Of a stretch of DNA of 64,000 nt, positions 35,490 to 55,554 are shown piece by piece. Under the pieces are notes generated by a model. That model was not told where the DNA came from, made no database searches, and saw nothing but the letters and a program-made list of their open reading frames with translations. The DNA lies in the IMG/VR virus record IMGVR_UViG_3300046513_000348, positions 154,661-218,660 of that record; one strand, written 5' to 3'. The first letter of the stretch is position 1, and every line of letters starts with the position of its first letter. Made by a program: the position numbers and the translations under genes.

Positions 35490-35508
35490 GTAATATATTT
35501 ATAACAAT
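35490..35508 (-). promoter_or_regulatory. Putative early promoter
   Basis: Exact TATATTAC on the minus strand. Confidence 0.65.
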
Positions 35509-47170: not shown

Positions 47171-47191
47171 GTAATATATAGCTGTTGAAAT
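47171..47191 (-). promoter_or_regulatory. Putative early promoter
   Basis: Exact TATATTAC with upstream TTTCA on the minus strand. Confidence 0.65.
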
Positions 47192-47219
47192 CTAGAGTGA
47201 AACAGACGACATAAAACAA

Positions 47220-47247
47220 ATACGAGTAGGCCGAAGCCTACTCGTAT
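47220..47247 (-). terminator. Intrinsic terminator
   Basis: ATACGAGTAGGC-TTCG-GCCTACTCGTAT on the minus strand plus T-tract. Confidence 0.85.
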
Positions 47248-47359
47248 CCTCACTCACTCTGATTGAGCGGTTTTTATTTGGCGGGCGGAGTCCAGGCCGA
47301 ATACCACACCTGGATTGCCACCTGCCACCAGATTCCCACTGCGACAGGAAGGAACATGG

Positions 47360-48475
47360 TTAGCCGATGCTGGAGGCGCCGACGGCTTCGTCTTCAGCCA
47401 TCTGCGTGCCGACATCGCCGGCGGTGATTGCTGGAACGATGAACATGTCGACGCCCGGCAGGATGGTCGCGAATTGTTCATCGGTCAGGTCCACGAGCTT
47501 CGACAGGTAGTACGGCAGGGTCACCTGCATTTCGGCCGTGCTGTTGTACGAAGCGACTTCTTCGGCGAGGATGCCCGATTCCAGGAACTTGGCCACCAGT
47601 GGCGTTGCGGCCGACTTGGACCAGGTCGCGATGGTGCTGATGTAGGTCGCTTTGGCCTCGTCGTCCAGGGCGCTGAATTCGTCCTTGTTCAGAACGTTGA
47701 ATTCGTTCTTGCCGCCTTCGGCTTTCTTCTGCTGCTTCTGCTTCTTGCTGGCGCCGTTCTGCTGGCTGCCATGCTTCTCGGTCAGTTCCTGCAGACCACG
47801 GCCGACGTAGTTGTCGAACTGGCCTTCGGCGAACACGATCTTCGGGGTGTGCGCGATCAGTGGCATGTTCTGCTTGATCTTGGTCAGCACTTCCTGCATC
47901 AGGCGTTCCGAGCTGATGAAGTCAGCCAGGTTGACGACCGGCGACACGATGGTGAAGCTGAAGCACTGGTCGGCGTCCGACGATTCGTTCAGCCACAGCT
48001 TGCCCTTGATGCCCGGGACCTTGGGGACGTCCAGCACGCCGCGGTAGGCGTTGAAGAAGGTCAGGTTGCCCAGGGGGACGATCAGCGTTTCCAGCAGCGG
48101 CTTCTGACGACCATGGTGGATCGTGCTGTAGTCGACGCGGTTGGTGTTCAGGCCGAGCAGGTTGCGGAACTGGGTAGCCAGCTGGGTTTCGGTCTGGATG
48201 TCCGGCGACTTGGCCAGGCCGTAGTGGTTCAGGAACGCGTCCGAGTTCACCAGGGCCTTGAAGGCCTGTGCCAGGCGCACGGCGATGTCCTTGACGTTCT
48301 TGCGGTTCTTCTTCAGCTCGGTCAGGTTGCGATGCAGGCGCCAGTAAGCGGTTTCGCCATTCGGCAGCTTGACTGCACCCGACGGCAGGTCGCTCGACAG
48401 GCTATTGAAGATACGCGGCAGTGCCAGGAATTGGATGGTTTGGCTGTCGACAGCACGTTGCAGTTTGGATGACAT
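47360..48475 (-). CDS. Hypothetical protein, probably highly expressed (371 aa)
   Basis: Codon bias similar to the major capsid gene; monocistronic between terminators; long structured UTRs. Confidence 0.8.
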   Translation of the reverse strand: MSSKLQRAVDSQTIQFLALPRIFNSLSSDLPSGAVKLPNGETAYWRLHRNLTELKKNRKNVKDIAVRLAQAFKALVNSDAFLNHYGLAKSPDIQTETQLATQFRNLLGLNTNRVDYSTIHHGRQKPLLETLIVPLGNLTFFNAYRGVLDVPKVPGIKGKLWLNESSDADQCFSFTIVSPVVNLADFISSERLMQEVLTKIKQNMPLIAHTPKIVFAEGQFDNYVGRGLQELTEKHGSQQNGASKKQKQQKKAEGGKNEFNVLNKDEFSALDDEAKATYISTIATWSKSAATPLVAKFLESGILAEEVASYNSTAEMQVTLPYYLSKLVDLTDEQFATILPGVDMFIVPAITAGDVGTQMAEDEAVGASSIG

Positions 48476-48698
48476 GATGATGCTCTCAGAGTGAGTGTTT
48501 TGGATGCCTGTGAGACAAAGCTCCAGGCGCACATAGGCAGAATGTCTACATAGAATGCAGAACACTTTCTCCACGGATGGAGTGGTTTTGTATCAACGTT
48601 GTGCAGATGGAGGCTGCTACGTCAAAGCATAACGCGAGGTCACTAGAAATTAACATATGGCATAAGGTCTGGTACTGGGTTGCCCCAGTACCATTTCG

Positions 48699-49130: not shown

Positions 49131-49198
49131 GGTGGTTAAACCACAAGATCATAAATCAGGATAGGGCTTTCGCCCTATCCTGATTTACGTTTCGTTAT

Positions 49199-55447: not shown

Positions 55448-55554
55448 TATGGTAAATTACGTAACTACTTCAATTTCGTTATATATTGCTGAAATTATCT
55501 ACATACGGACATAAACCAGGATAGGGCGAAAGCCCTATCCTGATCTACTTTTGT

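What the first reader, a model, noticed from the sequence alone, without database searches (positions are those of the whole stretch)
47251..48497. Orphan gene enclosed by complementary UTRs that would sequester its own ribosome-binding site
Seen: CACTCACTCTGA at 47251-47262 is the exact inverted repeat of TCAGAGTGAGTG at 48486-48497. The pairing extends by GAGC/GCTC across a 2-nt bulge (16 bp total). In the mRNA, the 5' arm (CACUCACUCUGAGAGC) lies 7-22 nt before the AUG and covers the likely Shine-Dalgarno; the 3' arm lies immediately before the terminator. The 371-aa ORF is monocistronic and has capsid-like codon bias. Inference: a closed-loop 5'-3' long-range interaction, as in hok or aapA type I toxin mRNAs, permitting translation only co-transcriptionally or after 3' processing. 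This would matter in a phage with uncoupled nuclear transcription. Alternatively it is an RNase III-type processing or circularisation stem.
Basis: partly seen in the sequence, partly recalled or inferred. Interest (0 to 1): 0.75.

Follow-up and report, generated by a model that had tools for sequence, protein, structure and literature searches.

The report
Phage mRNA whose two ends pair
In a giant nucleus-forming-type phage, the stretch just before one gene's start codon is complementary to the stretch just before its transcription terminator, and related phages keep this pairing through matching changes on both sides. The finished mRNA therefore probably folds into a closed loop that hides its ribosome-binding site, as a few bacterial mRNAs are known to do.

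Summary
On the minus strand, CACUCACUCUGA-GAGC lies 22 to 7 nt before the AUG at 48475. It pairs with GCUC-AA-UCAGAGUGAGUG, which ends 2-3 nt before a terminator hairpin.

A helix of this strength is weak evidence on its own: about 0.17 are expected by chance across the genome's leader and pre-terminator pairs. The comparative evidence is stronger.
- The window belongs to a Chiangmaivirus-like jumbo phage (family Chimalliviridae).
- Three deep lineages keep 8-16 bp between the same two places: the window, a metagenomic clade (L009), and the RSL2/RSF1/FLC/SURPRISE13 clade.
- The pairing persists where an extra ORF moves the arms 0.3 kb further apart.
- Three helix columns show changes on both sides.
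- Each leader pairs best with its own 3' arm (best of 120 permutations).
- Full-length folds give the helix a probability near 1 and cut Shine-Dalgarno accessibility about tenfold.

Five other lineages lack it, so it is not essential.

The unit is not monocistronic: a conserved 27-33 aa micro-ORF sits between the main gene and the 3' arm. The gene is not an orphan.

Best reading: a cis 5'-3' UTR lock of the icaR, hbs or hok-fbi kind, not a type I toxin-antitoxin system. There are no RNA data, so function remains inferred.

The parts
48628..48654 (-). Promoter-like block GTTAATTTCTAG-N10-TTATG. The putative transcription start is the G at 48628, giving a 153-nt 5'UTR.
   Evidence: The block is conserved in all homologous loci while the surrounding intergenic sequence diverges. 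It is unique in this genome. Its TATG matches the phiKZ late-promoter core T(-3)ATG(+1) described in PMC7598289. The start site is inferred, not mapped. Other TATG motifs end at 48661, 48549 and 48532.
48506..48528 (-). Local 5'UTR hairpin, followed by the A-rich spacer AUCCAAAA (48498-48505)
   Evidence: The hairpin appears in the MFE folds. Every homolog has a hairpin plus YUUNAAAA directly 5' of the arm. A relative in run X2 replaces 48502-48539 with 6 nt.
48482..48497 (-). 5' arm CACUCACUCUGAGAGC, at -22 to -7 from the AUG. It includes the Shine-Dalgarno-like GAGAGC (48482-48487).
   Evidence: The core ACUCA...GAGAG is conserved even in lineages that lack the 3' partner.
47360..48475 (-). 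Main CDS, 371 aa, function unknown (PHROG 34631)
   Evidence: Codon-bias rank is 3 of 202. The AlphaFold2 model has mean pLDDT 76.8. Its N-terminal domain resembles uncharacterised 215-aa proteins of the jumbo phages Psa21 and Noxifer. There is no match in PDB or AlphaFold DB.
47274..47357 (-). Conserved micro-ORF, 27 aa (MFLPVAVGIWWQVAIQVWYSAWTPPAK). It starts 2 nt after the main stop codon. Its own stop lies 5 nt before the 3' arm.
   Evidence: An ORF of 27-33 aa, rich in Trp and hydrophobic residues, is present in nearly all lineages. It either abuts the preceding stop codon or carries its own strong Shine-Dalgarno.
47251..47268 (-). 3' arm GCUC-AA-UCAGAGUGAGUG, built on a (GAGU)n-like repeat
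   Evidence: In all pairing lineages it lies 0-4 nt before the terminator.
47208..47249 (-). Intrinsic terminator: a 14-bp stem with a UUCG loop, then UUUGUUUUAU, which contains a TTATG
   Evidence: and (pair I7). The same hairpin sequence occurs in L009 and nearly the same in L012.
47171..47178 (-). TATATTAC, an early-promoter-like motif for the next gene. It marks the 3' boundary of the unit.
   Evidence: Seven copies occur in the genome, all on the minus strand in AT-rich intergenic DNA. The motif is conserved after the terminator in the homologs.

Best explanation
The unit is one mRNA of about 1.4 kb: 5'UTR, a 371-aa gene, a 27-aa micro-ORF, the 3' arm and the terminator. In the finished transcript, the leader from -22 to -7, including the weak Shine-Dalgarno GAGAGC, pairs with the 18 nt just upstream of the terminator hairpin. 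This closes the whole mRNA into a loop.

I propose that this is a selected, cis-acting RNA lock. It lowers access of 30S subunits to the start site. It probably also shields both ends from nucleases, because the helix lies one nucleotide from the terminator stem and could stack on it.

The 3' arm is the last sequence transcribed, so the lock forms only when the transcript is complete. In a nucleus-forming phage the mRNA is finished before it meets ribosomes, so it would reach the cytoplasm already locked. It would then need to be opened by 3' trimming, a helicase, RNase III-type processing, or ribosomes at the nearby micro-ORF.

Shown here: the complementarity, its position, its conservation and covariation, and its dominance in thermodynamic folds.

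Inferred: that it forms in vivo, that it represses translation or stabilises the mRNA, and how it is opened.
For: - The repeat is exact and correctly placed.
- The duplex energy is -27.3 kcal/mol, z = -6. It is the strongest of 271 leader and pre-terminator pairs in the genome.
- Full-length folds give every pair of the 16-bp helix a probability of 0.91-1.0, for five assumed 5' ends.
- Mean unpaired probability of the Shine-Dalgarno falls from about 0.25 to 0.02 only once the 3' arm is included. Scrambling the arm restores it to 0.26-0.28.
- Homologs (loci) show the same leader-to-pre-terminator pairing:
  - L009: 13 bp, -21.6 kcal/mol.
  - RSF1: 15 bp with one 1x1 internal loop, -22.2.
  - L014: 10 bp plus a new 7-bp helix next to the AUG, -25.6.
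  - Other Chiangmaivirus genomes: 8-10 bp.
  - Full-length fold probability is 0.99-1.0 in all five homologs tested.
- The 3' arm stays next to the terminator in phages that carry an extra ORF between the main gene and the micro-ORF.
- Covariation: column +4 is U:A versus A:U. Column +5 is G:C, A:U or G.U. Column +6 is A:U versus G:C. G.U wobbles in the mRNA sense occur in L009, RSF1 and L018.
- Each of the four most divergent leaders pairs best with its own 3' arm. The true assignment is the best of 120 permutations for 5 lineages, and 8 of 5040 reach it for 7 lineages.
- Precedent: distant anti-Shine-Dalgarno sequences repress in vivo over hundreds of nucleotides (PMC12697547). 5'/3' UTR pairing is known for icaR (PMC3868564) and hbs (PMC5737220).
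Against: - There is no RNA evidence of any kind. No RNA run was listed, and the transcript ends are inferred.
- Five other lineages show no significant pairing: L011 (only 6 bp), L012, L013, L016 and L017. Folded at full length, L011, L012 and L013 give probability 0; L016 and L017 were not folded. The element is therefore dispensable, or was gained or lost several times. The basal tree is unresolved.
- The 5' arm is conserved even without a partner, so part of the conservation has another cause.
- The 3' arm is a slippage-prone (GAGU)n repeat.
- FLC and RSL2 carry two mismatches in the covarying columns.
- Independent compensatory events number only about 2-4.
- In a single genome, chance expectation is about 0.17.
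- Repressing a gene with top-ranked codon bias is counter-intuitive.
- Equilibrium folds ignore folding kinetics, ribosomes and proteins.
Confidence: 0.55

Rival explanations
1. Chance complementarity kept by shared descent. The leader motif ACUCA..GAGAG is conserved for translation. The (GAGU)n run before the terminator is conserved or generated by slippage for reasons tied to the terminator. Their complementarity has no function.
For: - About 0.17 such pairs are expected genome-wide by chance.
- Five lineages lack the pairing.
- The 5' motif is conserved without a partner.
- FLC and RSL2 carry mismatches.
- Few independent events are available.
Against: - Three columns change on both sides, and G.U intermediates occur.
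- The cognate assignment is the best of 120 permutations.
- L014 creates a new 7-bp helix through a leader insertion plus changes in the 3' spacer.
- The pairing survives an ORF insertion between the arms.
Confidence: 0.2
2. The 3' end is released as a 3'UTR-derived small RNA: single-stranded seed UCAGAGUGAGUG, terminator hairpin and U tail. It acts in trans on the leader of its own mRNA as negative feedback, or on other targets.
For: The architecture of a seed directly 5' of an intrinsic terminator resembles 3'UTR-derived sRNAs (established knowledge). Complementarity and covariation fit trans pairing as well as cis pairing. sRNAs have been reported in a chimallivirus (PMC11512511).
Against: Intramolecular pairing is favoured and is predicted with probability near 1. 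No processing site or separate promoter was identified. No RNA data exist.
Confidence: 0.1
3. The helix exists mainly as a double-strand-specific nuclease (RNase III-type) site. Stacked on the terminator stem it would give about 30 bp, and cleavage would trigger decay or maturation of the mRNA, as in icaR.
For: The helix is 16 bp and lies 1-3 nt from a 14-bp terminator stem. The arm is 0-4 nt from the terminator in all pairing lineages. There is a precedent in icaR (PMC3868564).
Against: Helices in the Chiangmaivirus clade are only 8-10 bp, which is short for RNase III. Nothing here tests cleavage.
Confidence: 0.1
4. The repeat acts at the DNA level, for example as sites for inversion or recombination flanking a gene cassette.
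For: The inverted repeats flank a whole gene unit next to tail-fibre genes, and DNA sites would also co-vary.
Against: - The arms are only 8-16 bp.
- Some homolog pairs are G.U, which are valid only in sense-strand RNA.
- The unit is syntenic and in the same orientation in all 20 or so loci.
- No strand-changing joints appear in four metagenome runs. Contigs would miss rare variants, however.
- No recombinase gene is adjacent.
Confidence: 0.02

Closest known systems
icaR mRNA of Staphylococcus aureus: a 3'UTR anti-SD motif pairs with the 5'UTR (PMC3868564)
   Same: A cis element in the 3' region of an ordinary, non-toxin mRNA pairs with the Shine-Dalgarno region of the same molecule. The predicted result is blocked initiation.
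   Different: Here the arm is not a UCCCC anti-SD mimic. It is a gene-specific complement of the leader. It abuts the terminator, and the unit is bicistronic with a micro-ORF ending 5 nt upstream. The host is a jumbo phage. RNase III cleavage and repression are untested.
hok/sok mRNA fold-back inhibition (fbi-tac) and aapA1 of Helicobacter pylori (type I toxin mRNAs; from established knowledge)
   Same: The extreme 3' part of the full-length mRNA pairs with the 5' leader. The lock forms only when transcription is complete, and it gives a closed, inert and stable molecule.
   Different: The locked start site belongs to a 371-aa gene with strong codon bias, not to a small toxin ORF. No antisense antitoxin RNA was found and no Rfam family matches. 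The terminator lies 3' of the arm. Activation by 3' trimming is unknown.
Bacillus subtilis hbs mRNA 5'/3'-UTR interaction (PMC5737220)
   Same: Pairing between the two UTRs of a highly expressed gene, linked to protection from ribonucleases.
   Different: In hbs the pairing hides an RNase Y site and leaves the strong Shine-Dalgarno free. Here the pairing covers the Shine-Dalgarno-like sequence.
Long-range anti-SD-like sequences that pair with the RBS in B. subtilis (PMC12697547)
   Same: This work shows that pairing to the RBS from hundreds of nucleotides away works in vivo and lowers translation and stability.
   Different: Those sequences are selected against in genes. Here the complement is conserved and co-evolves.

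Membership tests
Type I toxin-antitoxin mRNA (hok/sok, aapA1/IsoA1) | The regulated ORF is a small (<60 aa) hydrophobic toxin | tested here: not met
   The sequestered start site belongs to the 371-aa main gene. A 27-aa hydrophobic micro-ORF lies in the same mRNA. Its start site is not the one covered by the helix, and its toxicity is unknown.
Type I toxin-antitoxin mRNA (hok/sok, aapA1/IsoA1) | A cis-encoded antisense RNA antitoxin | tested here: inconclusive
   No Rfam family matches on either strand. No convincing opposite-strand promoter was found, but phage RNA polymerase promoters are poorly defined. No RNA data exist.
Type I toxin-antitoxin mRNA (hok/sok, aapA1/IsoA1) | A 5'-3' fold-back in the full-length mRNA that occludes translation signals | tested here: met
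   Predicted with probability near 1. Unpaired probability of the Shine-Dalgarno falls from about 0.25 to 0.02. This is prediction only.
Type I toxin-antitoxin mRNA (hok/sok, aapA1/IsoA1) | Activation by 3' exonucleolytic processing | not testable with these tools
   This needs mapping of RNA 3' ends.
5'UTR-3'UTR base-pairing regulators (icaR type) | A segment of the 3' region complementary to the Shine-Dalgarno or leader of the same mRNA | tested here: met
5'UTR-3'UTR base-pairing regulators (icaR type) | Pairing maintained in evolution | tested here: met
   Three deep lineages keep it. Three columns change on both sides, and the permutation test gives 1 of 120. It is absent in five other lineages.
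5'UTR-3'UTR base-pairing regulators (icaR type) | Pairing lowers translation and/or creates an RNase III site | not testable with these tools
   This needs reporters, toeprinting and cleavage assays.
Intrinsic (Rho-independent-type) terminator | A GC-rich hairpin followed by a U-rich tract at the end of the unit | tested here: met
   The stem has 14 pairs and a UUCG loop, followed by UUUGUUUUAU. It is conserved in the homologs.
Chimalliviridae (nucleus-forming jumbo phages) | Genome relatedness to classified members | tested here: met
   The locus is 72-75% identical in DNA, and syntenic, with RSL2, RSF1, FLC6, FLC8 and SURPRISE13. Chiangmaivirus is classified in Chimalliviridae. Chimallin was not searched for in this genome.

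The most novel reading that the evidence does not exclude
The mRNA is a translation-gated closed loop. It is made inside the phage nucleus and reaches the cytoplasm already locked. Ribosomes on the conserved 3' micro-ORF open the lock.

The micro-ORF's stop codon lies 5 nt before the 3' arm in the window and in L009. It lies inside the pairing in RSF1 and in the helix-B lineages. The closed loop could also hand terminating ribosomes straight back to the start site.

This would be a self-sustaining on-switch for an abundant late protein, and a prokaryotic analogue of eukaryotic closed-loop translation.
Probability: 0.1. Interest if true: 0.85.

Novelty: new member of a known kind. Interest (0 to 1): 0.55.

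Why it matters
Cis pairing between the 5' and 3' UTRs that hides a ribosome-binding site is documented for only a few bacterial mRNAs: hok, aapA1, icaR and hbs. To my knowledge it has not been described for a phage gene.

In nucleus-forming phages every mRNA is completed and folded before it meets a ribosome. Finished-transcript structure could therefore be a main layer of control over timing, stability or export.

This locus offers a compact case supported by covariation. Cultured relatives exist (RSL2, RSF1, FLC6, FLC8, SURPRISE13) in which it can be tested. It also brings to light a conserved unannotated micro-protein.

Tried and rejected
- **Genome-wide motif.** I tested whether the arms belong to a repeated motif or a general mRNA design. 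They do not: the heptamers are under-represented, the 12-mer is unique, and no other unit shows comparable leader-to-terminator pairing.
- **Known RNA family.** No Rfam family matches.
- **RNA-seq.** No RNA run was listed, so ends and structure could not be read from data. The metagenome DNA runs gave strain variants only, in a truncated list, and no inversion joints.
- **More relatives.** IMG/VR returned only RSL2 and RSF1. The JGI metagenomes gave one truncated contig, and GTDB genomes gave none.
- **Protein identity.** Pfam gave nothing. PHROGs gave one family of unknown function. Foldseek against PDB and AlphaFold DB, VIA-align and the ESM Atlas gave nothing convincing. The only hit was to uncharacterised jumbo-phage proteins.
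- **Micro-ORF as key.** I tested whether the micro-ORF start site is clearly more open than the main one in the locked fold. It is not, so the result is inconclusive.
- **Shared promoter.** GCATTCTATGTAG and the GTTAATTTCTAC block are each unique to this locus.
- **Formal pair counting.** I did not use the count of structure pairs, because it would have required typing long strings. The equivalent table was computed in Python.

Full report
**1. Observation**

- The gene lies on the minus strand: CDS 47360-48475, 371 aa.
- In the mRNA sense the leader reads ...AUCCAAAA-CACUCACUCUGAGAGC-AUCAUC-AUG.
- The 3' region reads ...UAA-AAACC-GCUC-AA-UCAGAGUGAGUG-AGG-[terminator hairpin]-UUUGUUUUAU.
- The 12-nt inverted repeat is exact (pair I8). 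GAGC/GCUC extends it to 16 bp, with an AA bulge on the 3' side.

**2. Is it more than chance?**

- By length alone it is not. An exact 12-mer inverted repeat within 2 kb is expected several times in 64 kb.
- By placement it is unusual. RNAduplex gives -27.3 kcal/mol, and none of 1000 shuffles reach that.
- I called 202 genes and 90 terminator-like hairpins in the 218.6-kb genome. Of 271 same-strand leader and pre-terminator pairs within 6 kb, this is the strongest.
- Only 6e-4 of 17,909 non-cognate pairs reach that energy, so about 0.17 are expected genome-wide. Taken alone, this is suggestive only.
- The heptamers are not a genome-wide motif. No other unit shows the same design, so it is specific to this locus.

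**3. Context**

- The window is the last 64 kb of a 218,660-bp genome from a rhizosphere metagenome.
- The locus is 72-75% identical in DNA, and syntenic, with Ralstonia and Burkholderia jumbo phages: RSL2, RSF1, FLC6, FLC8, FLC4-x, SURPRISE13 and RsoM3USA. These belong to genus Chiangmaivirus, family Chimalliviridae.
- The gene order is: tail-fibre gene, a DUF4376 gene or an equivalent, a DUF1353 gene, this gene, a small early gene, then thymidylate synthase.
- The unit ends at a terminator. This is followed by TATATTAC, which occurs seven times in the genome, always on the minus strand in AT-rich spacers. That pattern fits an early (virion RNA polymerase) promoter.
- Upstream, a block ATGTTAATTTCTAC-N-TTATGMTTTGRC is conserved in all homologous loci. 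Its TATG matches the phiKZ late-promoter core, in which transcription starts at the G (PMC7598289). This gives a putative start at 48628. It is inferred, not mapped.

**4. The unit is bicistronic**

- Two nucleotides after the main stop codon, a 27-aa ORF begins (MFLPVAVGIWWQVAIQVWYSAWTPPAK). It ends 5 nt before the 3' arm.
- A related ORF of 27-33 aa, rich in Trp and hydrophobic residues, is present in almost every lineage.
- It either abuts the preceding stop codon or has its own strong Shine-Dalgarno, for example AAGGAGAU in RSF1.
- In several phages an extra ORF of 95-108 aa is inserted between the main gene and the micro-ORF. The SURPRISE13-type ORF is a weak paralogue of the main protein's C-terminal domain.
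- In all of these the 3' arm stays between the micro-ORF stop and the terminator.

**5. Comparative test**

I obtained 11 phage records and 12 metagenomic loci.

Pairing between the leader and the 40 nt before the terminator:

| Lineage | Pairing | Energy (kcal/mol) |
|---|---|---|
| Window | 16 bp | -27.3 |
| L009 | 13 bp, one G.U | -21.6 |
| RSF1 | 15 bp, one 1x1 internal loop | -22.2 |
| L014 | helix A of 10 bp, plus a new 7-bp helix ACGAUCA:UGAUCGU next to the AUG | -25.6 |
| Other Chiangmaivirus genomes | helix A of 8-10 bp, plus a weaker helix B that includes the AUG and the micro-ORF stop | -17 to -20 |

- Partition-function folds of the whole transcripts give these helices a probability of 0.99-1.0 in L009, RSF1, L014, RSL2 and FLC8.
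- In the window the probability is 0.91-1.0 for five assumed 5' ends.
- An anchored column table shows seven invariant core pairs and three covarying columns. Column +4 is U:A in the window and A:U elsewhere. Column +5 is G:C, A:U or G.U. Column +6 is A:U or G:C.
- FLC and RSL2 are mismatched at columns +5 and +6.
- Cross-pairing every leader with every 3' arm shows that the four most divergent leaders each prefer their own arm.
- The true assignment is the best of 120 permutations for five lineages. Eight of 5040 reach it for seven lineages.
- Five other lineages show no significant pairing: L011 (6 bp only), L012, L013, L016 and L017. L011, L012 and L013 also give probability 0 in full-length folds. 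Yet these lineages keep the leader core ACUCA..GAGAG.
- The basal tree is a poorly resolved star. Ancestral presence with losses cannot be told apart from repeated gains.
- A strain about 95% identical, seen in other metagenomes, shortens the bulge by one nucleotide. It also changes the outermost pair of the GAGC extension on the 3' side. No change in the 12-bp core was listed, but that list was truncated.

**6. Predicted consequence**

- Truncated transcripts leave the Shine-Dalgarno-like UGAGAGC unpaired with probability of about 0.25.
- Adding the 3' arm lowers this to 0.02. Scrambling the arm restores it to 0.26-0.28 and costs about 12-17 kcal/mol of MFE.
- In the window the AUG itself is unaffected. 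In the Chiangmaivirus clade helix B covers it.
- The Shine-Dalgarno is weak compared with the genome's usual AGGA or GGAG. The gene nonetheless has the third-highest codon bias in the genome.

**7. Interpretation**

- The best-supported reading is a selected, cis-acting helix between the 5' leader and the 3' end. It forms only when the transcript is complete, occludes the start site, and probably protects both ends. It lies one nucleotide from the terminator stem and could stack on it.
- This works like the icaR, hbs and hok-fbi mechanisms. It fails the membership test for type I toxin-antitoxin systems: the locked gene is large, no antisense RNA was found, and no Rfam family matches.
- How the lock is opened is unknown.
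- The position of the micro-ORF stop suggests that ribosomes could unzip the lock. The stop lies 5 nt before the arm in the window and L009. It lies inside the pairing in RSF1 and the helix-B lineages.
- The micro-ORF start site is not predicted to be clearly more accessible than the main one. I therefore keep this as the low-probability novel case.
- Rivals are chance plus shared descent, a trans-acting 3'UTR-derived sRNA, a primary RNase III site, and DNA-level repeats. They are listed with their evidence. The DNA-level rival is disfavoured by sense-strand G.U pairs, fixed orientation in all loci, and the absence of inversion joints.

**8. The protein**

- Function is unknown.
- The AlphaFold2 model has mean pLDDT 76.8. 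It shows an N-terminal alpha/beta domain (residues 1-235), a disordered Lys/Gln-rich linker, and a helical C-terminal domain.
- The only structural relatives are uncharacterised proteins of other jumbo phages, Psa21 and Noxifer.

**9. Verdict**

The RNA-level interpretation is partly supported by covariation. It is a new example of a known kind of mechanism, in a new and interesting setting, and has not been verified experimentally.

Noticed in passing
window 47274-47357 (-); homologs in L001-L018, L023: An unannotated, conserved micro-ORF of 27-33 aa, rich in Trp and hydrophobic residues. The consensus is roughly M[WF]xP....L...[IV]..Q..W....PW. It directly follows the main gene in nearly all lineages. 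It is either coupled to the preceding stop codon or has its own strong Shine-Dalgarno. It may be a small membrane-active or regulatory peptide.
   Followed up: partly
whole genome G000; e.g. window 47208-47217 (-), 48661-48669 (-): A genome-wide composite element: a GC-rich hairpin followed within 0-6 nt by (Y)TTATGY(TGTC). Of 90 intergenic hairpins, 35 have TATG within 20 nt downstream. Half of all TTATGY copies lie in the 10% of the genome that is intergenic. This could be late promoters (phiKZ TATG core) placed directly behind terminators, or a termination tail specific to the phage RNA polymerase.
   Followed up: partly
window 47171-47178 (-) and 35490-35497 (-); five more copies elsewhere in G000: TATATTAC occurs 7 times in the genome, always on the minus strand in AT-rich spacers. 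This fits an early (virion RNA polymerase) promoter consensus. The copy after the studied terminator is followed by a conserved palindrome, ACAACTTTGTTGT.
   Followed up: partly
window 48628-48654 (-): The block GTTAATTTCTAG-N10-TTATG(C) upstream of the gene is conserved in all homologous loci, including very divergent ones. It is unique within this genome. It is probably a gene-specific middle or late promoter.
   Followed up: partly
L004:1735-2022 (-), L005:1732-2019 (-), L023:3846-4133 (+): The extra 95-aa ORF inserted between the main gene and the micro-ORF in SURPRISE13, RsoM3USA and L023 is a weak paralogue of the main protein's C-terminal domain (27% identity, E = 6e-4). The different 107-aa insert in FLC6 and FLC4-4C shows no such similarity.
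   Followed up: partly
window 48502-48539: In metagenome run X2 a related phage replaces this 5'UTR hairpin segment with 6 nt (TGGTAG). The sequence on the 5'-arm side is kept (joints table).
   Followed up: no
window 49152-49187 and 55517-55542: Two terminator-like hairpins share the same core, CAGGATAGGGC...GCCCTATCCTG. Terminator sequences appear to occur in families within the genome.
   Followed up: no
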